This document shows positions 2,821 to 54,276 of a stretch of DNA of 64,000 nucleotides, one piece after another. The stretch's first letter is position 1; each line of letters opens with the position of its first letter. A model generated the notes under the pieces. The model searched no databases. It was not told where the DNA came from and worked only from the letters and a program-made list of their open reading frames with translations. Where the stretch lies: positions 62,001 to 126,000 of IMG/VR virus record IMGVR_UViG_3300037297_000066; one strand, 5' to 3'. The translations under genes and the position numbers were made by a program.

Positions 2821-2852
2821 TTACTACACGTGAGGGGGTTGGATCTTAACCC
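2821..2852 (-). promoter_or_regulatory. Class A motif GGGTTAAGATC-N7-CTCACGTGTAGTA, copy 1
   Basis: One of four copies with identical spacing, each 4-5 nt before an ATG. Confidence 0.7.
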
Positions 2853-3109
2853 TGCTTCCAACCTTTCTGGTGTCTGAGGTCGAAATCCTTCAGGTCAGGA
2901 GGGGTTTCCTCCCACTTTCGAAAAACTCCGTACCATTGAGAGGTGTCGTAGACGAACTCGCCGTCGGTAGTGTATGAAAGAGTGCCGTCTTTCAGTTGGA
3001 GCGCCTCCAGCATCAACCATCGGGGGTGAGGGGAAGGTTGGCATGTATCTCCGTAGAACAGGTAGGTCCCGGGTTCAGTCGGTAGTTGTGTGGACCACTT
3101 GGACATCAC
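2846..3109 (-). CDS. Hypothetical protein
   Basis: 87 aa ORF abutting the upstream gene. Confidence 0.55.
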   Translation of the reverse strand: MMSKWSTQLPTEPGTYLFYGDTCQPSPHPRWLMLEALQLKDGTLSYTTDGEFVYDTSQWYGVFRKWEETPPDLKDFDLRHQKGWKQG

Positions 3110-3400
3110 TCACTCCTCTTCTTCGTCCAACAAGAGCGCCTTCACCATTTGAGAAGCGTGAACGAAGGGGCCCACCTTCCGAAGGAACTTCTCCAAGGCT
3201 GCTGTCTTGGCCTTTTCCAAGTCGGTGGTGCCAAGAGGGACCTTGTTGTAGAGGGGGTGGCAGTGGCTCACCCACTCATCCCCATGGCGGAGGTGCTTGG
3301 TGATCACGATACGAACCCGCCCCACATAAGTGGCCCAGGTTCGGGGTTCGACCTTCCCACGTTCACCACGACCGTAACTGGTCTCGTCTTTCCATTCCAT
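3110..3400 (-). CDS. Hypothetical protein
   Basis: ATG 4 nt downstream of a class A motif. Confidence 0.65.
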   Translation of the reverse strand: MEWKDETSYGRGERGKVEPRTWATYVGRVRIVITKHLRHGDEWVSHCHPLYNKVPLGTTDLEKAKTAALEKFLRKVGPFVHASQMVKALLLDEEEE

Positions 3401-3404
3401 GCTT

Positions 3405-3436
3405 CTACTACACGTGAGGAGCCCGGATCTTAACCC
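3405..3436 (-). promoter_or_regulatory. Class A motif, copy 2
   Basis: Reverse complement GGGTTAAGATCCGGGCTCCTCACGTGTAGTAG, then AAGC-ATG. Confidence 0.7.
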
Positions 3437-3528
3437 TGGGCCTAGAAAAGTCTCTCCTATACCCTACACCGGGGGTTCCCCTTTTCAGACGAGTCCTAGA
3501 TGCCTGAGGCTAAATTCGGACCTTGGGC

Positions 3529-4188
3529 CTAGCCTTGGAGCTTGGACGCATTGTCCAAGTCGAACTTCTCGTCCAGGTAGAACTTCAGGTAGGTGGGTTC
3601 CCCGCCCTTTGGGGTATGTCGAAACTCCACGAACACTCGTCTACCTTCGAGACCAATAGTGTAACCACCGATTCTGCCTGTTCTTCGATGGTGCTCGATG
3701 GCCATCAGGGCGTGGTAGCCGTTGGCGGAGTGGACTTCTGAACGGGTGATCTTGAGAATGAGATCGTCGGAAAGAGCGTGGATGAAGGATTGTATCTCGG
3801 AAGGAGTGAGTTGCTGACCTTCGAGTACTATCTCGATGAGTCCGGCCAGATTGTTTCCTCGCAGTTCGCCGTACCAGATCTCCATAAAGGAGCGGACCCC
3901 CATAGTCACGATGTCAGTCAATACATCTGACGTGAGGGGTTGATCCTTGTATTTGCTTCCAAAGGTTTCTCGTAGTCGGAAGGCTGCCTTTTCAGCGGCA
4001 AGCATCATGGTACCTTTGACGTTGCTCGCACGTACCCCTGTGGAGAGCAGTATAGGAGACAGCACTCCTAGATCTGCCCACGCTTCTTCCAAGGGCTCTT
4101 CTTCGTCTTCACTCAAAGAAGAAGCAACAGTCGGTTCTTCATCCATTCGGGTAAGGGATCCTTGCTGGTGAAGCCAATGGAGACCCAT
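3529..4188 (-). CDS. Hypothetical protein (start probably internal, MDEEPT)
   Basis: Long ORF co-oriented with neighbours. Confidence 0.6.
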   Translation of the reverse strand: MGLHWLHQQGSLTRMDEEPTVASSLSEDEEEPLEEAWADLGVLSPILLSTGVRASNVKGTMMLAAEKAAFRLRETFGSKYKDQPLTSDVLTDIVTMGVRSFMEIWYGELRGNNLAGLIEIVLEGQQLTPSEIQSFIHALSDDLILKITRSEVHSANGYHALMAIEHHRRTGRIGGYTIGLEGRRVFVEFRHTPKGGEPTYLKFYLDEKFDLDNASKLQG

Positions 4189-4547
4189 GGGACAGGCTCA
4201 TACTCCAGTTGAAGGATTCGGGACTGCAGCATCAAGCAGTGAAACAGACCCTGAATGATCTTGGCCGAAGCTGGGTTCTTACGTCGAGATTTGATCAACT
4301 GTAGAGCAGAGTTCCTCAACTGCTGCACCACTAGATCTTGCTGAGCTTTAGGGACCAACAACGACACTCGGTGCTGACGGTTCTCTGTCAGGTACAAGGC
4401 TAGAGTCAAGGAAGCCTGGAATCCCTCTGAATCCAACTCTCGTAGATCCAACCCTCTGTAGCCTTGCTCGTATGCTTCGTACAAGCTCTGAGCGATCTCA
4501 CTAGGGGGTGTACCGTAAAGTCGTTGATGGAAGTCACCCAAAGCCAT
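4113..4547 (-). CDS. Hypothetical protein
   Basis: 144 aa ORF preceded by GGTG-TATGGT-N5-ATG (class B motif). Confidence 0.65.
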   Translation of the reverse strand: MALGDFHQRLYGTPPSEIAQSLYEAYEQGYRGLDLRELDSEGFQASLTLALYLTENRQHRVSLLVPKAQQDLVVQQLRNSALQLIKSRRKNPASAKIIQGLFHCLMLQSRILQLEYEPVPWVSIGFTSKDPLPEWMKNRLLLLL

Positions 4548-4864
4548 AGCTCACCATACACCAGTTACCGTCCGTTGGGATCGAAAAGACTTGGCAGATG
4601 TTCCCGTCTGTGACTAAGGTGCGCCCCTGCGTTGGACTGGCCCACGAGTCTAAATCGGCCGGCCTTTTTGAGTCTGTAAGTGACCTTAAACATTGAGCTT
4701 TTCAGTATATTTAGAGGCAAGACATACCCCTTCCTGTTCTGCGAGTTTGCAATACCTTTCTATGCGTACAGACAAAGTACACGCAGAAAACCCCGTTGAC
4801 CAAAGGGTAGTGCGGGGACTAGCTACGGGGATAGCTTGGTAACACGCCACCAAGGAAAACAACT

Positions 4865-12900: not shown

Positions 12901-13437
12901 ATGTGGGGCCAACAACGACAGCTCTGCGGCTCACAAGCAGAGACAAGGATTCGTCGTCATCGGACTTCTCTTGAGGAGAAACGAATGAGCTCTAAATTCG
13001 AGCAACGGCTAGCACTGGTTTGTCTTCTGTTCGTGCTCTCCGGGGTCCCCGCTGTAGTAGTAGGCTACAACTACGGAGCTCTCTACGGGGTGGGAGTCTT
13101 GGCTTTCGCCACATGGGTGGGGATGGTGTCTTCGATCCTGGTCTTTTCAAAACGGCTAGAAGAATCCCGTGACCAGGTGAAAAGCCTACAAAAACGCCTG
13201 ACAGAGACCCGTACAGATCTTCGACGAAGTCATCTGACTTTGACCCAGGAGTTCCGAGAACACTGTCAACAGACGGTCCCCCCTGCTAGATCCCCCAGTT
13301 TGAGAGAGCATCGAATCGAGGGTACTAGACTTTTGATCAAGATACCCGTCAGAAAGAACCATCGTTTAGAAACCGATGCAGACCCTCCAACTGCTTGGGA
13401 TCGTTTGAATTCTGAGGAATCTGAGACCACGGGTTAA
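12901..13437 (+). CDS. Two-TM coiled-coil protein with W-tag (PTAWDRL)
   Basis: Class B motif at 12878; alternative start MSSKF after GAGGAG. Confidence 0.7.
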   Translation: MWGQQRQLCGSQAETRIRRHRTSLEEKRMSSKFEQRLALVCLLFVLSGVPAVVVGYNYGALYGVGVLAFATWVGMVSSILVFSKRLEESRDQVKSLQKRLTETRTDLRRSHLTLTQEFREHCQQTVPPARSPSLREHRIEGTRLLIKIPVRKNHRLETDADPPTAWDRLNSEESETTG

Positions 13438-13462
13438 GATCTGGGCCCCTCACGTGTAGTAG
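13431..13462 (+). promoter_or_regulatory. Class A motif, copy 3
   Basis: GGGTTAAGATCTGGGCCCCTCACGTGTAGTAG, then AGAAC-ATG (13468). Confidence 0.7.
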
Positions 13463-13467
13463 AGAAC

Positions 13468-14136
13468 ATGACCAACATTGATGCCCAATGGGCAGCTGTA
13501 GAAGCCAAGCGATGTGCTGTCCTCAAAAAGGTTTGTGACAACATCAAAGCCCACGGCTATCCCGTGAAGGAAGGAGAGGGAGGAAGGGCCACTCTCGTGT
13601 ACGAGACGACTGTCATTGCCGCCTTTTCGGTAGATTTGAGAGGCAAGATCACGGTGCAGAATGTGGCGGGAAGAGAACGTACCCGAACCTACCCCCGCCT
13701 CAAGCAGACCGGTGAGTACAACGTCGAGAAGATGACGGAAACCATCCTCGACTGGGTGAAGGATCACAAACGACGGCAGGACCGACTTGAGGAAAGAAAG
13801 AGAGCTCTGGTTCCCTACGAGGAAGCTTTCCGGAAAATGGAAGCCGTTCGGAAAGGCCAGCGTGCTAAGTTTCGGGCCAGTCTGTCGGAAACGGGTGTGC
13901 GAGTTGTCAATGCCTTCAACGAATCAGCATTGCCCGTTCTGCAAGAGCTCATCACGGTCCAAGACGACAACGCCGCCGTTCACTTCGAAGGGGACATTCC
14001 CATCGCAGCCCTCAAAGTACTGCTGCCCTTCCTAGTATCCCCCGATTTCGGGGACGACAACTGTCGCCTCAAATTCGAAGCCAAGCTCAGTGCTGAAGAG
14101 GCCGTCGAGCTGGCTCGGAAGGTGTACGGTAAGTAA
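13468..14136 (+). CDS. Hypothetical protein
   Basis: 222 aa ORF downstream of a class A motif. Confidence 0.75.
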   Translation: MTNIDAQWAAVEAKRCAVLKKVCDNIKAHGYPVKEGEGGRATLVYETTVIAAFSVDLRGKITVQNVAGRERTRTYPRLKQTGEYNVEKMTETILDWVKDHKRRQDRLEERKRALVPYEEAFRKMEAVRKGQRAKFRASLSETGVRVVNAFNESALPVLQELITVQDDNAAVHFEGDIPIAALKVLLPFLVSPDFGDDNCRLKFEAKLSAEEAVELARKVYGK

Positions 14137-37435: not shown

Positions 37436-37642
37436 GGTGTACAGTAGGGGAGCGAAGCCATTTGCGAGAGGTTCAGTGGCAAGAGTTTCCTAGGGACCGC
37501 TCGAAAGTGTGTGTTCCTTGATAGTTAAACCCTGTTTCCTGCTGGTCAGAGTCTGGTGATATAGGGTCAGAAGACCAGAACTGGACAACCTATCGCAGAG
37601 TCCTGTCCAAAGGTCTGATCTGACACCCCCATTTAGGGGTGG
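37436..37642 (+). promoter_or_regulatory. CRISPR leader 1 with class B promoter motif
   Basis: Near-identical to 46955-47161; starts with GGTGTACAGT; abuts the first repeat. Confidence 0.8.
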
Positions 37643-39709: not shown

Positions 39710-40393
39710 ATGCCTACCCCCCCACTAAAACGAGTCTACGTCAGAGCCTGGGCTGAGCTGGGTTGTTGGAACACTCTTTCCCAGCAAGCCGAGCGCATCT
39801 CCAACATCGTACCCACTCATTCGGCCGTTCGAGGTTTTCTACGATCCATCCTTGGGAAATGGGAAACCGACTACCAGGTCCACGAATGTTGGTTGCTCCG
39901 GGAGCCGGAGTTGACCTCCCATGTCGTTAGCGAGGTCAACTTCAAGCCTACGGTCAACCCGCAAAAGCCCGTTCACATTGAAGGGGCTCGCATCATGCGC
40001 ACGAACACGTGCTTGAGAAACCCGGACTATATGTTCGTGTTCACCCCCATGCGTAGTTGGTGGGGAGACAAGGTCTTCCAAAAGGATCCCACCGAGACTC
40101 ACGAAAAGAACTGGAACATGTCAGTGAGGCGGTTGAAGCACGGTAAGCAACACCGACCGCCCTACTTTGGGATGAGCGACTACCCCGCCTCCTATGAATA
40201 CGTTGACAAGCCTCAACTCAAGCCTGTTCCTGTCAACCGAAACCTCGGCATCATGTACTGGGGGATCGACTACGCAGATCCTCAAGAACCCAGCTACTAC
40301 ACCGCCCTGAGCGTTGTGGACGGTGTAGTCCGTTACCCAACGGTAGAAGAAGTCCGGAAGAACGGCCTCAAATTGACGGATAGGCGATCATGA
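39710..40393 (+). CDS. cas5: Type I-C Cas5 (Cas5d/Cas5c)
   Basis: ERISNIVPTHSAVRGFLRSILGK, SEV, RTNTCLRNPDY, RRLKHG...PYFG, NLGIMYWGIDY, VVDGVVRYP match the Cas5c pattern. Confidence 0.9.
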   Translation: MPTPPLKRVYVRAWAELGCWNTLSQQAERISNIVPTHSAVRGFLRSILGKWETDYQVHECWLLREPELTSHVVSEVNFKPTVNPQKPVHIEGARIMRTNTCLRNPDYMFVFTPMRSWWGDKVFQKDPTETHEKNWNMSVRRLKHGKQHRPPYFGMSDYPASYEYVDKPQLKPVPVNRNLGIMYWGIDYADPQEPSYYTALSVVDGVVRYPTVEEVRKNGLKLTDRRS

Positions 40394-42246
40394 TCACAGC
40401 TCTCTACTCGTTTGGTAAGAACCGGGGGCTGGGATTCGATCCCTACTTCCCCCTGAAGCCCCACTACTACCTTCGACTATCTTCTTCGGGATCCGTGCGA
40501 ATCGAACCCATCAAGGAACCTGAGATCCGCCTCCCAGAGAAGTCCGGACGAAGCAGCAACATCGAGGCCAACTTCCTGTACGACACGGCCATGTACGCTC
40601 TGGCCTTCAACGCCATCCGCAAAGAGCGCTTGCTGACTCAGTTCCTGACTTTTTGGGGCAAGACCCTGGAACATCTGACCAACTGCGAAGACGTGGAAGC
40701 ACTGAAAGCCGTGAAGGCATTCTGCGACCAACTGGCCTTGTCAGAAATCTGCTCCGCCGTGAGTCAATGGGAAAAGAGCTCCAAGAAGCGGCTAGTGAGC
40801 CTTAAAGGCCCGAACCGTATCTCGGGTCTTGCTGAGATCCGGAAGGGACTCTCCGAGGTGGCTTTGGAGACCTTCGAAAGTCTAGCCAGTGGAAAACCCC
40901 CGGCCCCCATTCAAAAGGCCATAGGAGATCTGGCTATAGAAGGAGAGCAGTGGGTCATACTGACTTTGGAGGATGACAACACGCCCCTAGCGCTCAGGCC
41001 CAAGCCTTCTGAGCTGTGGGTTCAGCTCCAAAAGCCTACTGACGACAAGCCCACCAGCACCTGCTTGCTCACAGGGAAACCTTGTAAACCAGTCCGACTA
41101 CACCGGGCTCTCAAGGGTGTACCTGGTGGGGACAAAGGGATTCCTCTCATCTCGTTCGAGCAAGAAGTGACCCGCTACAAGGGCCGCAAGAAGGAAGACA
41201 ACTTCCCCATCAGTCGAGAAGCTCACGACACGTATGTAGCGGCCTTCCGGCACATTGTAGATCAGGGGAATGTCTTCGTGAGCATCAACTCCTGCCTCTT
41301 GGTATGGGTAGATGAGGCCGAGCATGACGAGCTCCTAACCCCCCTGCTGACGGTCCTACGATCCAAGGAAAAGGAGGAGGTCAAAGCAGCCTGGGACGAA
41401 GTAGAACGTCTAGACAGCGACGTCACGGTGCATCTGGCCATGCTTCGTAGCTCCAAGGGCCGCATCTCCATCCTAGGCTATCACACGCTTTCCGTGAATC
41501 AGTTGAGGGCCAACCTTCTCCGATTCCACGAAGAGTTCTCCGAGTTCCCAGAGTACACCCCAAGAGGGTTATTTTCCTGGATGCTCAAGAAGAACATCAA
41601 GGGCAAGGACAAGGAAACAGCCAAGCTCTACACCATGGTGACTTTGGCCGTAGTACTAGGGACTCCTTACCCGTTACAGATCTTCCCTAGCCTCATCCAG
41701 TGGATCAAGAACACGGACAGTGCCCTGGACTTGTTCTTGCATCTTACCTGGCTGCGAGCCTACGTCTGCAGGGACTACGGTATTAACCCGCCTCCTATCA
41801 AAAACCCCTTTCAAAAGGAGCCCCTCGTGTGCGAACCACGCATTGAAGAGAACGTCAACCTCAACGAAACCGACATCGGATACAACCTTGGAAGACTGGT
41901 CGCCTTAGACTGCCATCTGCGCAGAATGACCGGCATCAGTGTCAGTGAGATTTCCGAGGTACGTTCAGCCACCAACAACCCTCACATGTACATCAGCCGG
42001 AGCTACCGGATGCTCCCCACGCTGGAGAAGCTGGAGAAGAAGGGATGGGGGAAGCCTCTCAGGGAGATGCGTGAAGAGGTCAAGGCCAAACTTGCTCCTC
42101 TCGTGGCTACTCCCATTCGTCTAACTCTCCTTGAAGAGTCCAGCTTTCAGATGGCCTTCACGTACCAGAAGACCTACCTTCGCCGCTACAACGCTTGGAG
42201 GAAGCAGCAGTACAAGGCCGCCAAGGCTGCTGAGGAAGAGAACTGA
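40390..42246 (+). CDS. cas8c: Type I-C large subunit Cas8c (Csd1)
   Basis: RSSNIEANFLYD, CLLTGK...RLHRALKGV...LISFE...NFPIS, KGRISI, GYNLGRLVAL; ATGA-coupled to cas5. Confidence 0.88.
   Translation: MITALYSFGKNRGLGFDPYFPLKPHYYLRLSSSGSVRIEPIKEPEIRLPEKSGRSSNIEANFLYDTAMYALAFNAIRKERLLTQFLTFWGKTLEHLTNCEDVEALKAVKAFCDQLALSEICSAVSQWEKSSKKRLVSLKGPNRISGLAEIRKGLSEVALETFESLASGKPPAPIQKAIGDLAIEGEQWVILTLEDDNTPLALRPKPSELWVQLQKPTDDKPTSTCLLTGKPCKPVRLHRALKGVPGGDKGIPLISFEQEVTRYKGRKKEDNFPISREAHDTYVAAFRHIVDQGNVFVSINSCLLVWVDEAEHDELLTPLLTVLRSKEKEEVKAAWDEVERLDSDVTVHLAMLRSSKGRISILGYHTLSVNQLRANLLRFHEEFSEFPEYTPRGLFSWMLKKNIKGKDKETAKLYTMVTLAVVLGTPYPLQIFPSLIQWIKNTDSALDLFLHLTWLRAYVCRDYGINPPPIKNPFQKEPLVCEPRIEENVNLNETDIGYNLGRLVALDCHLRRMTGISVSEISEVRSATNNPHMYISRSYRMLPTLEKLEKKGWGKPLREMREEVKAKLAPLVATPIRLTLLEESSFQMAFTYQKTYLRRYNAWRKQQYKAAKAAEEEN
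41827..42246 (+). CDS. cas11: Putative internally translated Cas11c (139 aa)
   Basis: In-frame GTG with AAGGAG 6 nt upstream, shortly before the GYNLGRL helix. Confidence 0.55.
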   Translation: MCEPRIEENVNLNETDIGYNLGRLVALDCHLRRMTGISVSEISEVRSATNNPHMYISRSYRMLPTLEKLEKKGWGKPLREMREEVKAKLAPLVATPIRLTLLEESSFQMAFTYQKTYLRRYNAWRKQQYKAAKAAEEEN

Positions 42247-42378
42247 TCGTTCAGACAACGGAACGCAGACTTTTGCCGAAAAGTACCGCTACAAGGGTTG
42301 ATTAACCCTCAGGTACTTCAGGTATCAGGAGGTATCTCCTGGGAGTCATCTAGATCGAAATCAAAACAGGAGGGCCTC

Positions 42379-43386
42379 ATGGCTCATTCATCGTATCCAA
42401 AAAACAATGACACCAACGTTTCTATCGTCCCCAACCGAATGGAGATCGTGACTCTCACGGAATATCGGGACGGCACTCCCCAACTGGCGCCTGACGAAAA
42501 CGGCACTCGTCAGGATCCCTTCTCTGGTCAAGGCTTGATCACGGGAGTGGGTACCAAGCGCAAGATTCGGGACTTCGCAGCCCTGCTCGGCCAGTCTCTC
42601 TACGTGGCCCGTCGAGCCGTCTTGAGCCACGCCGTCAACGAAGCAGCTCAAGCCCTGGGGGTGGAAGCCGATGCCAACCAGGAGGAAGAAAGCCCTCCCA
42701 TCGACGAGGACAAGGAAACCGAGCCCGAGCCCAAGAGCAAGGGCAAGAGCAAGGGCAAGAGCAAGGCCAAGGGCAAGGCCAAGAAGGAAAAGAACAAGGA
42801 GCTCGATTACGAAGTTGCCCTGAAGGTCAGGGATGAACTGTGCCGACGGTACTGGGACATCCGGGCATTTGGGGCCGTTCTGTGCAGCCCCGTGAACATC
42901 CCCGTTCGAGGGCCTCTCCAAGTTGGGATGGCCAGGTCTGTGGATCCGATCAACCCCCTCACGCTCTCTATCACCCGGGTCGCTGTGGCTACGGACCGAG
43001 AAGCGGAGGAGCAGAAAGGGCGCAACCACACGATGGGCACCCAGACGGTCGTTCCCTACGGGGTCTACCAGCAACACCACTACTACAACCCCCACGACGC
43101 CGAGGTCACGGGCTTCTCCCAGGAAGACTTTGAGATCTACCTCAGGGCTCTCAGGGAGATGCATGACCACACCAGGTCATGCATGCGGACTGAGGTGGTT
43201 CCTAGGAAGATCGTCATCTTCCGGCACAGCTGCCCTTTGGGCAACGCTCCCAGCCACAAGCTGTTCGAGTTGGTCAAGTTGACCAAGAAGCCGGGGGTTC
43301 CTACCCCCACCTGTTGGGAGGACTACGAGTTCAGCGTGGACGTAGAAAATCTACCTGAAGGGGTGGAAATCGAAGTCATCGGCTGA
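42379..43386 (+). CDS. cas7: Type I-C Cas7 (Csd2)
   Basis: ITGVGTKRKIRD, YWDIRAFGAV, VRGPLQV, SITRVAV, TMG...VPYGVY, TGFSQED, LGNAPSHKLF; GGAGG RBS before ATG 42379. Confidence 0.92.
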   Translation: MAHSSYPKNNDTNVSIVPNRMEIVTLTEYRDGTPQLAPDENGTRQDPFSGQGLITGVGTKRKIRDFAALLGQSLYVARRAVLSHAVNEAAQALGVEADANQEEESPPIDEDKETEPEPKSKGKSKGKSKAKGKAKKEKNKELDYEVALKVRDELCRRYWDIRAFGAVLCSPVNIPVRGPLQVGMARSVDPINPLTLSITRVAVATDREAEEQKGRNHTMGTQTVVPYGVYQQHHYYNPHDAEVTGFSQEDFEIYLRALREMHDHTRSCMRTEVVPRKIVIFRHSCPLGNAPSHKLFELVKLTKKPGVPTPTCWEDYEFSVDVENLPEGVEIEVIG

Positions 43387-43395
43387 CCCCGTGGT

Positions 43396-43433
43396 GTATG
43401 GTGGGAGAGACGAGAAAGCCTCTCCCACCATAC
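43396..43433. other. Perfect 14-bp inverted repeat between cas7 and the helicase
   Basis: GTATGGTGGGAGAG-N10-CTCTCCCACCATAC; no U-tract. Confidence 0.85.
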
Positions 43434-43445
43434 CAGGTCCTAGAA

Positions 43446-45470
43446 ATGCCTAGAAGAATCACTCTCCACAACTTCCAGAGCAGAGACGCTAACCGCCTCT
43501 GCCCTCGGTTCGTTGACCACAAGGTCTTCGCTATCATCTACGCTACTGGAGCAGGCAAGACCTTGGAGATAAGGGCCATCGTTTCTAGGCTGTACCACCA
43601 CCGATACGATCCTGAATACAAGGGGTTCAGTTTCACTCACTGTATTTTTGCGGCCCCCCAACGAGTCATCCGAGACAACTTCATTGAGGACATCTCCGAA
43701 CTGGTGGACGGAAACCTAGTCTACCCCTGTCTCAATGTCGTCACCAACGTAAGTCGAGAGGACCTGGAAAGGTTCCTGGGGCAACGCTGGACCGTAGACC
43801 GTATGTGTATGGCGGTCACCCACAGTATCATCGTAAGGCTGATCCCATGGTTGGAAGAGGCCCTGCGTCAAGACCCTAGCTTTCTCGTGGGAAAAATCCT
43901 GGTTATAGACGAAGCTCACCACATTCCGGCCAAGAGGCTGGCCCAACTGTGTCGGTTATGGAAAGACCACGGTGGACATCTGGTACTCCTGACCGCCACC
44001 CCCAGCCATCCTGACATCGAAAAAGTCATCCCTGACAATGCCATCGTAGCTTGCAGAACTCTGCCGGAGCAGATGGAAGGCGGAAAGTACGCCCCCCAGA
44101 TCCTTGAGACCGGTATCATCAACGTCACCGGAGAGGGGTACTCGGACAAGGAGATGTGTGGGATCCCCGTAGACGCAGACACCGCCATTCAGGAGATTGT
44201 AGACGACTACGAAAAGCAATGCCTGGAAGCCAAATGCAAGCCTCGGGCCCTGGTAATCATCCGACCTCGTAAGACCAGAGAAGAGAACCGGAAGATCATT
44301 GAGCGCTTCCTAGAGTGCTTTGAAGCGAAGGGGGACCTGAACGGTCTCGGGAAGATCCGGCCCGTAGTTGGAGTAGGGGCACACAAGTCGGTTATAGGGG
44401 ATGTGTCTGACTGCATCGCTCACGACAAAGCGATTCATTCAGGGGAGCAATGCACCTGCTCGAAGTGCCGAGGGCTCCCGTACCGGAGACTGACCTTCAA
44501 AGACTCCAACTACGATGTCCTGATTCTGATTGGCCGAGGACGAGAAGGGCTGGATACCGTTCTAGCCAGTCACATGTACCTGTTCGGCCTATGCCACTTC
44601 TTGCCTTCGGTGGGGCAGCTTCTGGGACGCATTATGCGTTGGCGTAAAGAGGTTCTCGACTACCCTGACAAGTGGCGGAACAGATCCTACCTCCGCATCA
44701 TCACGGCCGGAGTCAAAAATCTGGCAGCCCACAGTCAGCAGGTACTGTTGACTATGCACTACCTCAACCTCCTAGGCTTGCAACAGTGGAGTGTCCTGAG
44801 CCTAGTCAGCCGAATTGTTGACAAGATGGCTTCAAAGGCAGGCCACCCTCGACTCGGTGGAAAGCGTATTCCCTACATCACCTTGGAGAAGCGAGCCGCC
44901 ATTCTCACCTACCATAGTGAGATGATGAAGTGGTACAACGAAGGCTCTTCTCAGAATGAGCGAAATCACGGGGCCCCCCTCAACAAAGTACTGACTCGTA
45001 ATGAGCAGGCTAAGCTCACACTCAGTAGGATAGAGTTGGGTTGCCTCAGGCTAAAAGGAGCCCCTAAGGACAAGATCACCGAAGCAGAGATCCTCTTGGT
45101 CCTCACTGACCTTGAAGCCTCCTTCCACCGTGAGCAAAAAGAGGCCCTCCAAAGAGAGTTGTGGAAAGCCTTGGAAGAGCTGTTGCCCGAGGAAGGGGTG
45201 ATGAGTGCCGTCAACAGAGCTCTGGTTCAAGTGGCCTCCTCATTCCGAGAAGCCACTCTAAGCTACTCCCTGCTTGCCAGCCGGGTTCAACAGGAAATCC
45301 TGAGCTTGACTACTGAGCATATTGAAGACTTCTCAGCCCGCTTGGACGAGGCCCTCAAGAACAGCACGGCTCAAGCAGAAAAGAAACTGGAGACCCGCTA
45401 CGGGTACTCCCCCGGAACCTTGGAGACGTTCCGAAGAACCATAGCCAACCACCCGCCGGGTGTAAGATGA
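43446..45470 (+). CDS. SF2 DEAH helicase, restriction-enzyme/RadD-like rather than Cas3; no HD domain
   Basis: YATGAGKT ~30 aa from the start, IDEAHH, LTATP, GREGLD, QLLGRIMR; Cys-rich insert CTCSKC. The alternative start 43398 lies inside the hairpin. Confidence 0.85.
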   Translation: MPRRITLHNFQSRDANRLCPRFVDHKVFAIIYATGAGKTLEIRAIVSRLYHHRYDPEYKGFSFTHCIFAAPQRVIRDNFIEDISELVDGNLVYPCLNVVTNVSREDLERFLGQRWTVDRMCMAVTHSIIVRLIPWLEEALRQDPSFLVGKILVIDEAHHIPAKRLAQLCRLWKDHGGHLVLLTATPSHPDIEKVIPDNAIVACRTLPEQMEGGKYAPQILETGIINVTGEGYSDKEMCGIPVDADTAIQEIVDDYEKQCLEAKCKPRALVIIRPRKTREENRKIIERFLECFEAKGDLNGLGKIRPVVGVGAHKSVIGDVSDCIAHDKAIHSGEQCTCSKCRGLPYRRLTFKDSNYDVLILIGRGREGLDTVLASHMYLFGLCHFLPSVGQLLGRIMRWRKEVLDYPDKWRNRSYLRIITAGVKNLAAHSQQVLLTMHYLNLLGLQQWSVLSLVSRIVDKMASKAGHPRLGGKRIPYITLEKRAAILTYHSEMMKWYNEGSSQNERNHGAPLNKVLTRNEQAKLTLSRIELGCLRLKGAPKDKITEAEILLVLTDLEASFHREQKEALQRELWKALEELLPEEGVMSAVNRALVQVASSFREATLSYSLLASRVQQEILSLTTEHIEDFSARLDEALKNSTAQAEKKLETRYGYSPGTLETFRRTIANHPPGVR

Positions 45471-46183
45471 ACCTTGTAAAATTCAACAAACAGCCCTGGA
45501 GGTTGCGAACCTTTCAGAGCATGCGTAGTGAAAGCAGATTGTGGGATGGGTTTAAGCTGCGAGGGATCTACGCAGAGATGACAGCTCTTTCTGGCCACGA
45601 AATGTACCTCATCCTAAAAGAACACAAGGCTCTTGAAAAGCCTTACTACTTCGTAGGCTCTGATCTCAATGTGAAAGTCTACGTAGAACTCAGGGAAGAC
45701 AAGGAACGTGGGAAAATCCCGTGGACGGTAGCCTTCGGGGACATCATTCAAGTAGTCCAACAGATCATCCACAACAAGGATGGCCTCCCTGTTGCCGTTC
45801 TGAACATGGATGGGTTTGATCAGGTAGGGGGAAGCAAGTGGTGGAGTGAGACGGCCTCCCCCCTCGTAGAGATTGTCGAGGATTCCGTCAGGCGTCTAGG
45901 CAGTTTCATGTTGATTCTCAACAAGACCCTCGACACCCGAACCAAGAGTGATCCACTAGAGGCTTTGAGAACCCAGACGGCCCTCCTTTGCAAGGTCTTC
46001 GGCAAACGTTGGCCCTTGAGTCATAGCGACATCGTAACAGACATCCCCCCAGAAGTAGCCAACCGCAGCTTCGTAGGAGACGTGGGCGCCTTCCAGATCT
46101 ACAAGAGCAAAGGACGCCAGCTTCGAATGGCTACCTTGAGACTGGCTTTTCAACCCAGAAGAATTGTGGCCAAGCTTAGCTAG
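45467..46183 (+). CDS. Hypothetical, possible class I SAM-dependent methyltransferase-like fold
   Basis: Strand order YAEMTALSG / FVGSDLN / AFGDI / VLNMDGF mirrors motifs I-IV; ATGA-coupled to the helicase. Confidence 0.5.
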   Translation: MNLVKFNKQPWRLRTFQSMRSESRLWDGFKLRGIYAEMTALSGHEMYLILKEHKALEKPYYFVGSDLNVKVYVELREDKERGKIPWTVAFGDIIQVVQQIIHNKDGLPVAVLNMDGFDQVGGSKWWSETASPLVEIVEDSVRRLGSFMLILNKTLDTRTKSDPLEALRTQTALLCKVFGKRWPLSHSDIVTDIPPEVANRSFVGDVGAFQIYKSKGRQLRMATLRLAFQPRRIVAKLS

Positions 46184-46954: not shown

Positions 46955-47161
46955 GGTGTACAGTAGGGGAGCGAAGCCATTTGCGAGAGGTTCAGTGCTA
47001 CCCGTAGCCTAGGGACCGCTCGAAAGTGTGTGTTCCTTGATAGTTAAACCCTGTTTCCTGCTGGTCAGAGCCTGGTGATACAGGGTCAGAAGATCAGAGC
47101 TGGACAACCTATCGCAGAGTTCTGTCCAAAGGTCTGATCTGACACCCCTATTTAGGGGTGA
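46955..47161 (+). promoter_or_regulatory. CRISPR leader 2 (duplicate of leader 1)
   Basis: Same sequence apart from one 11-nt block and about 7 scattered substitutions. Confidence 0.8.
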
Positions 47162-49116
47162 GTCGAGGGAGGGCAATCCTCTCTCGGGAGTTTCAACGAG
47201 CGACAACATCGTGCGGACCGTCGCCAGCTGCAACGTCGAGGGAGGGGGATCCTCCCTCGGGAGTTTCAACCGGGGCAGCTACCTTCCTTTCGAGCGGTAC
47301 ACGTTGGGTCGAGGGAGGGGATCCTCCCTCGGGAGTTTCAACGTAGCTCACGTAGGCGTTCTCGGAATCGCCGGTACCTCGTCGAGGGAGGGTCCTCCTC
47401 CCTCGGGAGTTCCAAGCAGCTACTCGACGCTTTGGGCAAGCCGAATGACATCAAGTCGAGGGAGGAAAATCTTCCCTCGGGAGTTCCAAGGAGCTCGGGT
47501 CCAGGTGACTCAGACTGGTACATCTGGGTCGAGGGAGGGGATCCTCCCTCGGGAGTTCCAAGTAGGTAGTGCTCGACTGGCGTGGTCATTCGGCCTCTAC
47601 GTCGAGGGAGGGGATCCTCCCTCGGGAGTTCCAAGTGGACCACCTCGGGTGGCAGTCGCCCCGATACTAGGGTCGAGGGAGGAAAATCTTCCCTCGGGAG
47701 TTCCAAGAGATCGTCGGACATCACACCACCTCCAGCAGCTGCGAGGTCGAGGGAGGAAAATCTTCCCTCGGGAGTTCCAAGGAACGAAACTGACGGATAC
47801 TCAGCCAGCGCGTTAACGGTCGAGGGAGGGGGATCCTCCCTCGGGTGTTTCAACGAAGGACGGACACAGCAAGCCACGGACAGAGGTCGAGGGAAGGAAA
47901 TCCTCCCTCGGGAGTTCCAACTGACCCGCCTTTCGGGCAAGAGCCGCCTGGCTCGTCGAGGGAGGGTGATCCTCCCTCGGGAGTTTCAACCCGAACGCGG
48001 TAGTGGCAGCCGTGCCCCACCCCACGTCGAGGGAGGGTCCTCCTCCCTCGGGAGTTCCAACACCATATCGAAGGGAGCAGAAGCCATGAAGCAGAGTCGA
48101 GGGAGGAAAATCTTCCCTCGGGAGTTCCAAGGTACGCGAGCCTCGCGACGGTTCTGACCACAGGTGTCGAGGGAGGAAAATCTTCCCTCGGGAGTTCCAA
48201 GTCGGGGTAACGCCGTTGGCCTTGCGGCGAGTCGAGGGAGGGGTTTCCTCCCTCGGGAGTTCCAAGAGTTTGCTCAGCCGGGGTGGGTGCGTCGGAGTGC
48301 GTAGTCGAGGGAGGGGTTTCCTCCCTCGGGAGTTCCAAGATCAGCGTTCAGCGCCCATGAGATTTGATCGTGATGAGTCGAGGGAGGGTCCTCCTCCCTC
48401 GGGAGTTCCAAGTCGGGACCAGTGCCCCAGACCGCGCTGAAGTTGATGTCGAGGGAGGAAAATCTTCCCTCGGGAGTTCCAAGAGAAGCCTCGTCCCCCT
48501 TCTCCCTTTCTTCTTCCAGCGTCGAGGGAGGGGGATCCTCCCTCGGGAGTTTCAACTAAAGACCGCCGCGTCTTCCAGTTCCGCCACGAGCGGTCGAGGT
48601 AGGGGGATCCTCCCTCGGGAGTTTCAAGTTGTACACGGTGGTCGTCCCCACCTTGAGGGCACGGTCGAGGGAGGAAAATCTTCCCTCGGGAGTTCCAAGG
48701 AGGACTACCAGGCGAGGCAGGCCAAGGACGTGTTCAAGGTCGAGGGAGGGGGATCCTCCCTCGGGAGTTCCAAGACGCCCGGACCTGACGAGCCCGTAGT
48801 CCCTCCAGAAGTCGAGGGAGGGAAATACTCCCTCGGGAGTTCCAAGAGCGCCCTGATGCGTCTGGATGAAAGCTTCGCTGCCGTCGAGGGAGGAAAATCC
48901 TCCCTCGGGAGTTCCAAGAGGACGGACGACGGACGCCATTCTGTCGCTTGCTTCTTGTCGAGGGAGGGTCCTCCTCCCTCGGGAGTTCCAAGAGCTAGTC
49001 ATCCCACGGGCGTTCCGTTCGACTCGAAGTCGAGGGAGGGGGATCCTCCCTCGGGAGTTCCAAGAATGTCAGGAAGCAGTGTCGAGGGAGGGAGATCCTT
49101 CCTCGGGAATTTCAAT
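47162..49116 (+). CRISPR. CRISPR array 2: about 28 repeats, same repeat family as array 1
   Basis: Counted by eye; last spacer is only ~16 nt and the last repeat is degenerate (GAATTTCAAT). Confidence 0.97.
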
Positions 49117-50432: not shown

Positions 50433-50455
50433 ACCCAATCCGAAAAGGAACCCAA

Positions 50456-51772: not shown

Positions 51773-51788
51773 GCTGCGCCCAGCTTTG

Positions 51789-51822: not shown

Positions 51823-51891
51823 CATTTGAGCGTTGTGCATCTTGTAAGATCCCGAAGAAAAAGCTATTACTTACAAGTCACCTATACCAAC

Positions 51892-52230
51892 ATGCCTCCC
51901 TCCAAACAGCAAAAACGTAAGGCCACCAACCGCCGAGAAGTACTGGTCATACGCAACCAGATAGGGCCTCTGCAGCTACCCAAAAGGAAAGAAGAGTTCC
52001 TCCGGAAGATGCTGCAGTACCGATTCAAAAACCTCTACACGAAGCTCCGAACCGACCATCCAGAAGTCTTTGAAGATCGTCGGCAGGACTACAACGGAGA
52101 GGCTCGCAACTACTGGCACTACGGGTATCTAGCGGCTCTCAAAGACTTCCTGCATCTAGTCCAACGGGGGGTATGGCCCCTTGATGCCTACAACCCCAAC
52201 CACCCCCTAGACTTGCCCGAGGACGACTGA
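51892..52230 (+). CDS. Hypothetical protein (start MPPSK)
   Basis: TGATG-coupled to the next gene. Confidence 0.55.
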   Translation: MPPSKQQKRKATNRREVLVIRNQIGPLQLPKRKEEFLRKMLQYRFKNLYTKLRTDHPEVFEDRRQDYNGEARNYWHYGYLAALKDFLHLVQRGVWPLDAYNPNHPLDLPEDD

Positions 52231-52838
52231 TGACTGCACACCTGGTAGGGGAAGACCGAACCAGAACCTTGTGTGGGATATACGTGTCAGTCCTTCCCGA
52301 GGGGGACACCTGGGCTTTTCAGTCTTCAGCCACCTACTCCAGCTGTGCTGCCTGTATCAACGCTAACAACGCCCCCGTCACAGTCCGAAGAGAGGGGTTT
52401 ACTGTACATCGAGAAGGGAACCCCCGAGTTTCAAACGAAGAGCACGGGAGTTGGGCCACGCTGCTTGGATCTGCTTTTGACTACCATCAAGAGTGCACCA
52501 AAGAACTCCAAATCAAAGTGGCCCAACTCGAAGAGGATGTCTCCGTACTGACACTGGTGTTGGCGACCTTTCTGCCTCATCTGAACTCAGAGTGCAGGGA
52601 GACTGTGATGAGCCTTCTGAAGTCGAGGCCCCTCCCCTCATGTCGCCCCGAGCTGGAGACGTCCGACGATGGCGGTGTATGGTTCAAGCCAGAGATCCTT
52701 CGAACCACCCAGGATCCCCCCACGGTGCTCACCATTTGGGAACGACTCTTAGAGGATGCGTCTCCTCCCCAACCCGTCCCGACCGTACGGCTGACTCATG
52801 GATCCGATACTGCTGAGACTGGCAAAGAAGGCGATTGA
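52230..52838 (+). CDS. Hypothetical with W-tag (LTIWERLL)
   Basis: N-terminal small Cys motif; tag. Confidence 0.6.
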   Translation: MTAHLVGEDRTRTLCGIYVSVLPEGDTWAFQSSATYSSCAACINANNAPVTVRREGFTVHREGNPRVSNEEHGSWATLLGSAFDYHQECTKELQIKVAQLEEDVSVLTLVLATFLPHLNSECRETVMSLLKSRPLPSCRPELETSDDGGVWFKPEILRTTQDPPTVLTIWERLLEDASPPQPVPTVRLTHGSDTAETGKEGD

Positions 52839-53003
52839 AGAGCACCCCCACGAGTGGGAGAATCATCGCAAGGGGAAGGCTAACGTCACCTACCTAGCAG
52901 GGTGGCTCCTGTCCGCTCTGAGAACTCAGAACCCAGACACCCAGGCCACCCTAGCCGAAGCTCGAAAAGCCATTGTAGGGGCACTTAGCCAGGATACAGA
53001 GGG

Positions 53004-53411
53004 TTGATTCCCAAAGTCGGCTCCTGGTGGCGAACCAAGAGCGCCCAGTGGCCCAGTACGGCTTTTTTACTCACAGGCTTCAGGGACGTCTTCCACGAGG
53101 TGGTTTCCATCACTGAAGAGGACGTCTGCCTGATCCAAAACGGAGCGGACCGGCCCTACTTCATCCCCAAAGACGAATTCGACCAAGGAAAGTTCAAGCC
53201 TTTCCGGCCCCGAGGCTCAATACCTTCGTGGGTGAGACCGGGGGTCCTTTTTCGTAGACCCCGGGGAAAAACCTGGACAGTCACGACGGTTCGAGGAAGG
53301 TTCTTCACCGCCGAGATCAGGTACGGCACCTTTCGGTTCTTCAGTCCTGACGAGATTTCGAACTTACGGCCGTACCTGACGTGGCACGAGCGACTTCTAT
53401 CTACAGATTGA
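53004..53411 (+). CDS. Hypothetical with W-tag variant (LTWHERLL)
   Basis: Two SH3-like repeats; tag. Confidence 0.6.
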   Translation: MIPKVGSWWRTKSAQWPSTAFLLTGFRDVFHEVVSITEEDVCLIQNGADRPYFIPKDEFDQGKFKPFRPRGSIPSWVRPGVLFRRPRGKTWTVTTVRGRFFTAEIRYGTFRFFSPDEISNLRPYLTWHERLLSTD

Positions 53412-54240
53412 GGAACTGCGAGCTTCCCTCGTTCGGCCGAGCGTGGAGATAGCGGCTAGTAGTCGCCACGTTGGCGTGCCCGAGGGTTGCTTGCACGAGG
53501 TGTATGGGGGCCCCGTTGTCCAGGGCATGGCTAGCATGAGCGTGACGCAGCCAGTGAGGGGAAGCCTTCTCGCCGATGGCATCAGCGGTCTCGTAGATGA
53601 TCTGCCGAGCTTCTCGGACACACAGAGGGTTGCCTCGCCGGCTCTTGAACACGAGGCTATGGTCGGTGTCGTTCTTCCAACGAAGTTTTCGGAGCTCGTT
53701 GACGAACTGGGCAGAGAGCTTGACGGTTCGGGTCTTACCGCCCTTCCCGTGGAAGGTGACCCTGTCGATGCTCAGGTCCGCCCATGTAAGGTTCACGGTT
53801 TCGGTGATACGGGATCCCGCCGCATATAGCAGCTTGATGAGCAGGTAGTTGCGGCCAGGCTCTGCTGCGGCCAGCAATCCCTGAACGGTTTCCTCGTTCA
53901 GGATTCTCTCGTGGAGAGTGTCTCTCACTGAGGGGGCCTTCAGGATGAGGGCCACGTTGAACACCGTGTAGCCGGTCTGGTGAGCGTACTTCATGAGGCT
54001 CTTGACCGAGCGGATCCGGCGGGCCTTCGTCGCTGGGGAGCCCACCAGGGATTCAGCATAGCGAACCACGTGGTCCACCTTGGCTTCCTGAAGACCTACA
54101 TTCTCCGACTCTAGGAACTCCAAGAACATCTGGGCATCCCGGGAGTACGCTATGGCTGTATTTTCAGGACGACCCGACAGCCAAAGTTGAACCAAATGCT
54201 TGTCGGAAGTAGCGCCGGAGTAGTTTTCAGGAAGCCGCAT
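53401..54240 (-). CDS. Tyrosine recombinase, XerC/XerD-like
   Basis: GSRITE (R), GKGGK (K), PHWLRHAHASH, LGHANVATTSRY (HxxR, H, Y). Confidence 0.95.
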   Translation of the reverse strand: MRLPENYSGATSDKHLVQLWLSGRPENTAIAYSRDAQMFLEFLESENVGLQEAKVDHVVRYAESLVGSPATKARRIRSVKSLMKYAHQTGYTVFNVALILKAPSVRDTLHERILNEETVQGLLAAAEPGRNYLLIKLLYAAGSRITETVNLTWADLSIDRVTFHGKGGKTRTVKLSAQFVNELRKLRWKNDTDHSLVFKSRRGNPLCVREARQIIYETADAIGEKASPHWLRHAHASHALDNGAPIHLVQATLGHANVATTSRYLHARPNEGSSQFLNL

Positions 54241-54244
54241 ACCT

Positions 54245-54276
54245 CAATTACACTTGAGACTCACGGATCTTAACCC
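54245..54276 (-). promoter_or_regulatory. Class A motif, copy 4 (upstream of the recombinase)
   Basis: GGGTTAAGATCCGTGAGTCTCAAGTGTAATTG, then AGGT-ATG. Confidence 0.65.

What the first reader, a model, noticed from the sequence alone, without database searches (positions are those of the whole stretch)
2821..54276. Class A motif: a 32-bp conserved element directly upstream of four start codons, including the recombinase
Seen: GGGTTAAGATC-N7-CTCA(C/A)GTGTA(G/A)T with identical spacing at 2821-2852(-), 3405-3436(-), 13431-13462(+) and 54245-54276(-), each 4-5 nt before an ATG and with no room for an RBS. TTAAGA and TAGTAG are 17 nt apart, like -35/-10 boxes, and three copies contain a CACGTG palindrome. 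Inference: a distinct promoter class (early, or recognised by an element-encoded sigma/activator) producing leaderless mRNAs and defining a regulon that includes the XerC/D-like enzyme.
Basis: partly seen in the sequence, partly recalled or inferred. Interest (0 to 1): 0.6.

Follow-up and report, generated by a model that had tools for sequence, protein, structure and literature searches.

The report
Phage promoter fused to start codons
The repeated 32-bp element is real and is most likely a phage-specific promoter that sits directly against the start codons of about 38 small genes of a 437-kb uncultured wetland phage, giving mRNAs with no leader; copies also mark the points where gene cassettes differ between strains.

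Summary
The four window copies belong to a family of 38 copies (43 with degenerate ones) in a 437,331-bp phage genome; the reversed-pattern control finds none. All lie at gene boundaries and point at the next gene. In 28 of 38 a start codon (27 ATG, 1 GTG) follows GTGTA by exactly 8-9 nt.

The phage also has a more common box, TGGTGTAYRGT, then a G-rich 5-7 nt, then the start codon (60 sites). It looks like a -35-less extended -10 promoter for leaderless mRNA. The 3' half of the class A motif matches this box in the same register, but has G where the key -11 A should be. It adds an invariant GGGTTAAGATC at -36 to -26.

My reading: a second promoter class that needs an extra, probably phage-encoded, factor and starts transcription at or next to the ATG. 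Copies whose ATG lies further away carry a GAAAGG ribosome-binding site, which fits this.

Copies also bound cassette gains and losses between strains, as PeSL cassettes do in T4-like phages.

No RNA data exist, so no transcription start is shown. The factor, the timing and the host are unknown. This is a new member of a known kind.

The parts
2821..2852 (-). Class A copy 1: GGGTTAAGATC-CAACCCC-CTCACGTGTAGTAA. The TAA at 2848-2846 inside box 1 is the stop codon of the upstream ORF 2846-3109(-).
2676..2816 (-). Small ORF (46 aa) whose ATG lies 8 nt after GTGTA of copy 1. A second ATG at +3 opens a 45-aa frame, so this start is the least certain of the four.
3405..3436 (-). Class A copy 2: GGGTTAAGATC-CGGGCTC-CTCACGTGTAGTAG.
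3110..3400 (-). 96-aa ORFan. Its ATG, 8 nt after GTGTA of copy 2, is the first possible start in its frame (the in-frame stop lies 66 nt upstream, with no alternative start between).
13431..13462 (+). Class A copy 3: GGGTTAAGATC-TGGGCCC-CTCACGTGTAGTAG. The TAA at 13435-13437 is the stop codon of the upstream ORF 12901-13437(+).
13468..14136 (+). 222-aa ORFan. Its ATG, 9 nt after GTGTA of copy 3, is the first possible start (in-frame stop at -33). No Pfam, PHROG or NCBIfam match.
54245..54276 (-). Class A copy 4, the most divergent window copy: GGGTTAAGATC-CGTGAGT-CTCAAGTGTAATTG.
53401..54240 (-). 279-aa XerC/XerD-like tyrosine recombinase. PF00589 gives E 1e-31, and PF02899 (the N-terminal SAM-like domain) matches from residue 25. 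Best NCBIfam matches are XerD, XerC and XerA-like, all below the equivalog cut-offs. The ATG 8 nt after GTGTA is the first possible start (in-frame stop 6 nt upstream). A public gene call starts at residue 38, which would cut into the SAM-like domain.
4553..4562 (-). Context: one copy of the general leaderless box GGTGTATGGT, followed by 5 nt and then the ATG at 4547 of the ORF 4113-4547(-). Other window gene starts with this kind of box are 14137(+), 25629(-), 28199(-)/28236(+), 36677(+), 39710(+, Cas5c), 58110(+), 58932(-) and 59803(-).

Best explanation
The class A motif is a phage-specific promoter built directly against the start codon.

Taking the A of the ATG as +1, the layout is:
- -12 to -7: TGTAGT, a -10-like hexamer.
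- -6 to -1: R-G-G-G-C, a G-rich discriminator.
- -18 to -13: CTCA(C/G)G.
- -36 to -26: the invariant GGGTTAAGATC, where a -35 element or an activator box would sit.
- About -48: a weak A/T-rich patch, where an UP element would sit.

Transcription by the host's multisubunit RNA polymerase would start at or within a nucleotide or two of the ATG, giving leaderless mRNAs.

The hexamer is the phage's general leaderless box (TAYRGT) with the critical -11 A replaced by G. I therefore infer that the host primary sigma cannot use it alone. A further factor, probably phage-encoded, would read box 1 and make these about 38 genes a separate regulon or temporal class. Those genes are small ORFans plus a methyltransferase-like protein and the XerC/D-like recombinase.

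The 223-aa tandem sigma-region-4 protein at genome 334,433-335,104 is the only candidate found for that factor.

A second, observed property: because the copies are 30-40 bp of near-identical DNA next to unrelated small genes, recombination between them adds, deletes and swaps gene cassettes between strains.

Shown: the anatomy, the conservation, and the recombination joints. Inferred: promoter function, the transcription start, dependence on a factor, and timing.
For: 1. 38 copies against 0 in the reversed-pattern control. All lie between genome 64.8 and 268.6 kb, in the region of small genes on both strands.

2. In 27 copies an ATG, and in one a GTG, lies exactly 8 or 9 nt after GTGTA and opens an ORF. 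In 16 of the 27 ATG copies this is the first possible start in the frame.

3. The divergent pair 197095(-)/197125(+) leaves only 29 nt between the two motif starts. The promoters of both genes must therefore lie within the motifs.

4. The consensus scan finds no sigma-70-type promoter in the 5.9-kb stretch that holds 15 copies.

5. A second box, yTGGTGTAYRGT followed by 5-7 nt, precedes a start codon at 60 of its 103 occurrences. It has no -35-like conservation and occurs back to back at divergent genes with about 34 nt between the start codons. This matches -10 motifs adjacent to ORFs that drive leaderless genes in Deinococcus (PMC12340547) and the GGGA discriminator read by Thermus sigma A (PMC3526302).

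6. Aligned from the ATG, class A agrees with that box at 8 of 11 positions. The differences include -11 (own comparison of the profiles).

7. Copies whose ATG is 15-50 nt away carry GAAAGG(A) before the ATG. Copies at 8-9 nt have no room for it. Elsewhere in the genome, Shine-Dalgarno matches sit mostly 4-10 nt before the start.

8. In a strain 93-98% identical, box 1 shows 0 differences in 297 sites. Differences in box 2 fall at positions 19, 23, 29 and 30, mostly the variable ones. The N7 spacer shows 12 in 189, and the flanks 2-3.7%.

9. The downstream proteins are unrelated to each other apart from one trio of paralogs, so the repeat is not a by-product of gene duplication.

10. No RNA polymerase gene was detected. 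One sigma-70-superfamily protein with region 4 only was found.

11. Recombination: 18 of 46 synteny breakpoints between the strain contigs and this genome lie within 20 nt of a copy, against about 1.4% expected (two of the contigs cover the same region). Cassette deletions join copies exactly, for example a 523-bp skip equal to the distance between copies 199851 and 200374.
Against: - There is no transcript evidence. All 17 runs that hold this DNA are DNA runs.
- Neither possible hexamer is a proper TAnnnT. TGTAGT lacks A at -11 and TAGTAG lacks T at -7. TTAAGA is 15 nt from TGTAGT, a poor spacing for sigma-70-type enzymes.
- No factor has been tied to box 1. The sigma-region-4 protein lies far away, in the large plus-strand gene block, and nothing links it to the motif.
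- A G-rich run at -6 to -2 could be argued to be a very close ribosome-binding site on a longer RNA.
- About half of the copies can form a hairpin between the upstream flank and the N7 spacer, which a pure promoter does not require.
- Three or four copies have no convincing ORF downstream.
- The host is unknown, so its ability to translate leaderless mRNA is assumed from the phage's own gene starts.
- The gene calls used are my own crude ones.
Confidence: 0.6

Rival explanations
1. Box 1 is an operator for a phage repressor, like the stoperators of mycobacteriophage L5. It would sit on a weak variant of the general leaderless promoter, so the motif marks negatively controlled genes. On this view there is no new polymerase specificity.
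For: - Box 1 is an asymmetric, invariant 11-mer in one orientation relative to transcription. It lies in short intergenic spaces and often overlaps the upstream stop codon.
- The phage carries a tyrosine recombinase under the same motif. That would fit a temperate or pseudolysogenic lifestyle.
- Two further box 1 copies (139505 and 271254) are joined to a different downstream sequence, CAATCGTT. Box 1 is therefore a separable module.
Against: - The spacing from box 1 to box 2 and to the ATG is fixed in nearly all copies. A road-block site would not need that.
- The -11 G makes the core unlikely to fire on its own, so an activator fits better than a repressor.
- No repressor gene was identified.
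Confidence: 0.15
2. The element acts as RNA. It would be a conserved 5'-UTR or intercistronic module, a hairpin followed by CUCACGUGUAGUAGGGGC. This module would drive ribosome loading, re-initiation or processing just before the AUG. Transcription would start further upstream.
For: - GGGUU can pair with the R-R-Y-Y-Y part of N7 if G-U pairs are allowed. The 22-nt core folds slightly better as the sense strand than as antisense (-4.2 against -3.0 kcal/mol).
- In some copies the upstream flank pairs with N7 to give long sense-specific stems, for example -24.7 against -9.5 kcal/mol at 205826.
- Fourteen upstream ORFs end at the TAA inside box 1, 29 nt before the next ATG.
- There is a purine-rich run next to the ATG.
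Against: - Over the extended region, sense and antisense fold equally well (-9.59 against -9.53 kcal/mol, P = 0.58).
- The pairing register shifts from copy to copy, and the recombinase copy does not pair.
- N7 is the fastest-changing part between strains, and I saw no clear compensating changes among the differences listed.
- No Rfam family matches.
- Divergent back-to-back copies leave no room for promoters upstream.
- Copies with distant ATGs carry their own GAAAGG site.
- The 3' half matches a DNA-level -10 box plus discriminator in register.
Confidence: 0.1
3. The motif is the promoter of a phage-encoded RNA polymerase too divergent to detect. Its 30-bp continuous specificity would resemble that of T7-, N4- or crAss-type enzymes.
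For: - The recognition sequence is unusually long and nearly invariant for a bacterial holoenzyme.
- Five large ORFs at genome 1-18 kb (624 to 1325 aa) have no Pfam or PHROG match, and the three searched against the PDB gave no credible match.
- The PF00940 search rang in no control genome, so it does not show absence.
Against: - There is no match to PF00562 or PF00623, and those searches rang in all 14 control genomes.
- No DFDGD-type catalytic loop was found. The one exception is a DIDGD in the 1325-aa ORF, and that ORF's nearest look-alikes are DUF4815 phage proteins.
- The in-register likeness to a TAnnnT-type box points to a sigma-dependent enzyme.
Confidence: 0.1
4. The copies are only recombination or mobile-cassette boundaries, integron- or MITE-like. 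On this view they have no role in gene expression.
For: - Cassette gains and losses between strains are bounded by copies.
- A tyrosine recombinase gene carries a copy.
Against: - The two boxes are not inverted repeats of each other, so there is no recombinase core-site architecture.
- The recombinase scores far below the integron-integrase cut-offs (76.6 against 265 bits).
- The fixed distance to the ATG and the constant orientation toward the gene are not explained.
- Joints that retain one copy are what homologous recombination between repeats gives.
Confidence: 0.05

Closest known systems
Leaderless-gene promoters: the -10 motif adjacent to ORFs in Deinococcus-Thermus (PMC12340547), and the leaderless middle and late transcripts of Thermus phage phiYS40 (as summarised in PMC3594737)
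   Same: A -10-like box lies a fixed 5-7 nt before the start codon. There is no Shine-Dalgarno sequence and ATG predominates. The G-rich discriminator resembles the GGGA element read by Thermus sigma A (PMC3526302). The phage's general box TGGTGTAYRGT fits this kind closely, and class A shares its register.
   Different: Class A has G at the -11 position and adds an invariant 11-mer at -36 to -26 and CTCA at -18 to -15, so it is not a plain -10-only promoter. The host is unknown, and the samples are wetland and marine sediment rather than hot springs. No transcript mapping exists here.
PeSL cassettes (promoter-early stem-loops) of T4-like phages (PMC2839356, PMC4122927)
   Same: Many near-identical promoter-containing repeats lie in regions full of small ORFans. 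Insertions, deletions and replacements between close relatives are bounded by the repeats. Some copies have an adjacent stem-loop.
   Different: PeSL promoters are strong sigma-70 consensus promoters with a defined terminator hairpin and ordinary leaders. Here the promoter is non-consensus and abuts the ATG. The hairpin is variable, overlaps box 1 and mostly lacks a T tail. Mini-circles were not examined.
T4 MotA/AsiA-dependent middle promoters (from my own knowledge of the T4 literature, not read here)
   Same: A conserved box centred near -30 takes the place of the -35 element and would make a set of phage genes depend on a phage factor.
   Different: T4 middle promoters keep a good TAnnnT -10 and have normal leaders. 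No MotA or AsiA match was found, though those searches had no positive control.
Stoperators of mycobacteriophage L5 and its relatives (from my own knowledge)
   Same: Dozens of asymmetric sites, in one orientation relative to transcription, lie in short intergenic gaps that overlap stop and start codons.
   Different: Stoperators are 13-bp repressor sites with no fixed distance to a start codon and no linked -10-like box.

Membership tests
Sigma-70-type -35/-10 promoter | -10 hexamer TAnnnT about 7 nt before the transcription start | tested here: not met
   With the ATG taken as +1, the hexamer at -12 to -7 is TGTA(G/A)T, with G at -11 in 38 of 38 copies. The alternative hexamer TAGTAG has T at its last position in only 5 of 38. 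The consensus scan finds none in the 5.9-kb stretch with 15 copies.
Sigma-70-type -35/-10 promoter | TTGACA-like -35 element 16-18 nt upstream of the -10 | tested here: inconclusive
   TTAAGA matches 4 of 6 positions. It lies 17 nt from TAGTAG but 15 nt from TGTAGT (sequence).
Leaderless-gene promoter (-10 box adjacent to the ORF) | -10-like box at a fixed short distance (5-8 nt) from the start codon, with no Shine-Dalgarno sequence | tested here: met
   In 28 of 38 copies a start lies 8-9 nt after GTGTA, which is 6-7 nt after TGTAGT. GAAAGG appears only where the ATG is 15 nt or more away.
Leaderless-gene promoter (-10 box adjacent to the ORF) | mRNA 5' end at or within a few nt of the start codon | not testable with these tools
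   No RNA run holds this DNA. Read laying returned only DNA contigs.
PeSL-type regulatory cassette | Indels between close relatives are bounded by the repeats | tested here: met
   18 of 46 breakpoints lie within 20 nt of a copy, against about 1.4% expected. Segment maps of L036, L038 and L039 agree. There are joints of 523 and 247 bp between copies.
PeSL-type regulatory cassette | Terminator stem-loop joined to the promoter | tested here: inconclusive
   A hairpin between the upstream flank and N7 forms in roughly half of the copies, with a variable register and no T tail. Terminator-like hairpins with a T tail lie directly upstream of 2 of the 15 copies in the 5.9-kb stretch scanned.
PeSL-type regulatory cassette | Strong sigma-70 consensus early promoter | tested here: not met
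T4 MotA-type middle promoter | MotA and AsiA homologs in the phage | tested here: inconclusive
   There are no PF09114 or PF09010 matches, but neither search rang in any control genome.
Integron attC site or tyrosine-recombinase core site | Inverted binding arms around a short spacer, and an IntI-type integrase | tested here: not met
   Box 1 and box 2 are not inverted repeats of each other (sequence). The recombinase scores 76.6 bits against the 265-bit cut-off of TIGR02249 and matches XerD and XerC models better.
Known RNA family (Rfam) | Match to a curated covariance model | tested here: not met
   0 matches at gathering score in 104 kb that include 24 copies.

The most novel reading that the evidence does not exclude
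Class A promoters are read by a phage-specified form of the host polymerase. A phage protein would dock on the invariant GGGTTAAGATC and allow opening at a -10 element with G instead of A at -11. The protein might be the tandem sigma-region-4 protein, which lacks any region 2. This would be a new sigma-appropriation-like mechanism dedicated to leaderless genes in a CRISPR-bearing huge phage, with the same 36-bp module doubling as the joint for cassette exchange.
Probability: 0.2. Interest if true: 0.65.

Novelty: new member of a known kind. Interest (0 to 1): 0.42.

Why it matters
Almost nothing is known about how uncultured huge phages organise transcription. The two jumbo-phage transcript-mapping studies I read, on phiKZ and AR9, found leadered transcripts made by the phages' own polymerases.

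Here the sequence alone points to a different design:
- no detectable phage polymerase;
- about 100 genes whose start codons abut promoter boxes;
- two promoter classes that probably separate two phases or conditions of expression.

Practical consequences:
- The motif gives a ready-made regulon of about 38 genes, mostly ORFans, to test.
- It corrects start-codon calls; the public call for the recombinase, for example, starts 37 codons too late.
- It shows where this phage's accessory genes are exchanged.

If a phage factor that reads box 1 is found, it would be a useful orthogonal transcription part.

Tried and rejected
- Exact-pattern scans for the motif in IMG/VR, in GTDB genomes and in a 110-kb relative (PolA 43% identical) found nothing. 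The metagenome scan found only a close strain of the same phage. No deep comparative set exists.
- I tried to infer the host from the CRISPR repeat in GTDB genomes and from look-alikes of the recombinase. Both gave nothing usable.
- Searches for RNA polymerase and sigma genes (PF00940, PF04542, PF00562, PF00623, catalytic-loop patterns) were all negative. The one DIDGD hit is in a DUF4815-like protein, a weak lead against it being a polymerase.
- PDB sequence searches of three large ORFans gave no credible match.
- Ribosomal protein S21 and IF3 genes, which could bear on leaderless translation, were not found.
- The CACGTG palindrome as a functional dimer site is rejected. It is absent from 14 of 38 copies.
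- An RNA hairpin as the main function is not supported.
- An integron-like system is rejected.
- I looked for a late-promoter motif in the 283-435 kb block. Only three intergenic AGATGTAGA sites turned up, too few to call.
- My first gene caller, a fifth-order model, missed most small genes and was replaced.

Full report
**What the window is.**
The window is bases 62,001-126,000 of a 437,331-bp IMG/VR virus record with direct terminal repeats (127 bp by my check), rated 100% complete. GC content is about 55%.

Runs that hold this DNA come from wetland, marsh, rhizosphere and marine-sediment metagenomes. All are DNA runs.

The genome has a replication block at 20-55 kb, containing a SNF2 helicase, a DnaB-like helicase, a family A DNA polymerase and a topoisomerase IB. 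A central region from about 60 to 280 kb holds small genes on both strands. A long plus-strand block runs from 303 to 435 kb.

**The observation.**
The pattern is present without mismatch at the four stated places, against 0.00 expected. The ATGs follow at the stated distances.

In the whole genome there are 38 copies at <=2 mismatches, and 0 for the reversed pattern. At <=4 mismatches there are 43. All lie between 64.8 and 271 kb.

Conservation extends beyond the searched letters. Position 30 is T in 37 of 38 copies. Positions 33-35 are purine, mostly G. There is a weak A/T preference 11-12 nt upstream of the motif.

**Position relative to genes.**
In 27 copies an ATG lies 8 nt (22 copies) or 9 nt (5 copies) after GTGTA. 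In one more a GTG lies 8 nt after it.

In 16 of those 27 the ATG is the first possible start in its frame. For the recombinase, the in-frame stop is only 6 nt upstream.

Upstream ORFs often end inside the motif. They end at the TAA of GGGTTAAG in 14 copies, and at the TAG of GTGTAG in several others. No copy sits deep inside a gene. The apparent overlaps come from my caller taking the longest frame.

The downstream proteins are unrelated to one another, apart from one trio 39-50% identical. They are mostly ORFans. The exceptions are a methyltransferase-like protein, a zinc-ribbon protein and the XerC/D-like recombinase.

**A second, commoner box gives the key to the register.**
GTGTAYNGT occurs 103 times, and 60 of those are followed after 4-7 nt by a start codon that opens an ORF of 40 aa or more. 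The profile is yTGGTGTAYRGT, then G-rich bases, with no -35-like conservation upstream (examples).

Divergent genes can have their two boxes back to back with about 34 nt between start codons, for example genome 37073(-)/37108(+). That leaves room for nothing but the boxes.

This arrangement has been shown experimentally to drive leaderless genes in Deinococcus (PMC12340547). The G-rich stretch matches the GGGA element just downstream of the -10, which strengthens promoters read by Thermus sigma A (PMC3526302). Thermus phage phiYS40 makes most of its middle and late mRNAs without leaders (PMC3594737).

By contrast, the jumbo phages phiKZ and AR9 gave no leaderless transcripts.

**Class A in that register.**
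Aligned backwards from the ATG, class A reads T-17 C A C/G G-13 T-12 G-11 T-10 A-9 G-8 T-7 A G G G C-1. The general box reads T-17 G G T G-13 T-12 A-11 Y-10 R-9 G-8 T-7 G G G G C-1. Eight of eleven positions agree, and the differences include -11 (own comparison).

This places TGTAGT at -12 to -7, exactly where a transcription start at the A of the ATG would require it.

From established knowledge of sigma-70-family enzymes, the -11 A is the base flipped into sigma region 2. A G there should cripple recognition by the primary sigma. That is my reason to think class A needs help through its extra upstream elements.

**Evidence that the start is at the motif's 3' end.**
Copies whose ATG is 15-50 nt away all carry GAAAGG(A), or a similar purine block, before the ATG. 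The 8-9 nt copies cannot. Elsewhere in the genome, Shine-Dalgarno matches sit mostly 4-10 nt before the start.

The divergent pair at 197095/197125 has 29 nt between motif starts. No sigma-70 consensus promoter is found in the 5.9 kb that holds 15 copies.

**Selection.**
Eleven metagenome contigs (L032-L042) are a strain 93-98% identical to this genome. Across 27 aligned copies the differences are:
- box 1: 0 in 297 sites;
- box 2: 9 in 324, all at positions 19, 23, 29 and 30;
- N7: 12 in 189;
- flanks: 2-3.7%.

These contigs were found through at least one exact copy each, so the zero for box 1 is somewhat favoured by the way they were found.

**Who reads the motif.**
Searches for T7-like and multisubunit polymerase domains, sigma region 2 and catalytic-loop patterns were negative.

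The only sigma-like gene encodes 223 aa. It has an acidic N terminus, a clear region 4 (PF04545 E 7e-13; it passes the TIGR02937 superfamily cut-off) and a second weaker region-4-like helix-turn-helix. It has no region 2. Nothing links it to box 1, so it is a candidate only.

Genes under the general box include a ClpX-like ATPase, an HNH nuclease and Cas5c, but no recognisable transcription factor.

**RNA-level alternative.**
GGGUU can pair with N7, and in about half of the copies the upstream flank pairs with N7. However, the register shifts between copies. Sense and antisense fold equally well over the extended region. N7 is the most variable part between strains. Rfam finds nothing. I keep this reading as a minor rival.

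**Recombination.**
Synteny between the strain contigs and this genome breaks at class A copies. Of 46 internal alignment ends, 18 lie within 20 nt of a copy, against about 1.4% expected. L036 and L039 cover the same region, so the independent count is about half of that.

In L036 every insertion (318 and 241 bp), and the 523-bp deletion, is flanked by copies. Contigs from other runs show the same 523-bp joint and a 247-bp one. This is the behaviour described for PeSL cassettes of T4-like phages (PMC2839356, PMC4122927).

**Verdict.**
The motif is real, functional and under selection. The best reading is a phage-specific, probably factor-dependent, promoter for leaderless mRNAs that also serves as a recombination joint.

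This is a new member of known kinds (phage promoter families, leaderless promoters, PeSL-like cassettes) and not a new kind of system. The transcription start, the factor, the timing and the host remain untested.

Noticed in passing
window about 37,640-39,560 and 47,160-49,075 (minus strand); cas genes at window 39,710-46,183: There are two CRISPR arrays of about 26 and 27 repeats. The repeat is about 36 nt, (C/G)TTGGAACTCCCGAGGGAGG-NNNNNN-CTCCCTCGAC, with a variable hairpin loop and a period of about 72. The arrays flank a type I-C-like gene set: Cas5c, Cas8c/Csd1, Cas7/Csd2, a 690-aa helicase and a 238-aa ORF. The repeat is absent from GTDB genomes.
   Followed up: partly
genome-wide; window gene starts at 4547(-), 14137(+), 25629(-), 28199(-)/28236(+), 36677(+), 39710(+), 58110(+), 58932(-), 59803(-): A general leaderless box, yTGGTGTAYRGT followed by 5-7 G-rich nt and then ATG or GTG, occurs at about 60 gene starts. 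It has no -35-like conservation. It is sometimes found as back-to-back divergent pairs with about 34 nt between start codons.
   Followed up: yes
genome 57083-57183, 147285-147383, 178595-178695, 205116-205214, 226107-226221, 229512-229615; strain insertion sites at window about 3547-3554 and genome 144470-144478: A dispersed repeat of about 100 bp is present at some sites in one strain and absent from the same sites in the other. It looks like a small mobile element (MITE-like).
   Followed up: no
genome 133,730-135,391 (L012:7730-9388): A 553-aa protein matches phrog_1211, named '2-aminooxy adenylosuccinate synthetase' (PurZ-like), with E 5e-71. If it is a true PurZ, the phage DNA might carry 2-aminoadenine, which would bear on how -10 elements are read. 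It was not distinguished from an ordinary PurA.
   Followed up: no
genome 278,190-302,050 (L019, L020); 257,557-257,714 (L018); 302,878-303,261 (L020:16878-17261): There are about 50 tRNA genes in one region. There are also two adjacent tRNAs with a CUA (amber-reading) anticodon and a tmRNA with the tag ANDNAIADQAIAA. The large ORFs are intact under code 11, so no recoding is evident.
   Followed up: no
genome 334,433-335,104 (L028:1303-1971): A 223-aa protein has an acidic N terminus, a sigma-70 region 4 and a second region-4-like helix-turn-helix. It has no region 2. This is an unusual architecture for a sigma-family protein.
   Followed up: partly
genome 139,478-139,505(-) and 271,254-271,281(+): Two copies of box 1 plus N7 are joined to a different downstream sequence, C(T/C)CAATCGTT. 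A leader with GAAAGG follows before the ATG. Box 1 therefore appears to be a module that can be combined with another core.
   Followed up: partly
genome 425,261-433,006: A 2581-aa ORF contains about 19 copies of a protein repeat of roughly 50 or 100 aa, each with the DNA word AACAAGAAGAG. It is probably a fibre or surface protein.
   Followed up: no
window 53,401-54,240(-): A public protein record for the recombinase begins at residue 38 of the frame. That start would cut into the N-terminal SAM-like domain, which matches from residue 25. Standard gene callers seem to miss the leaderless starts of this phage.
   Followed up: partly
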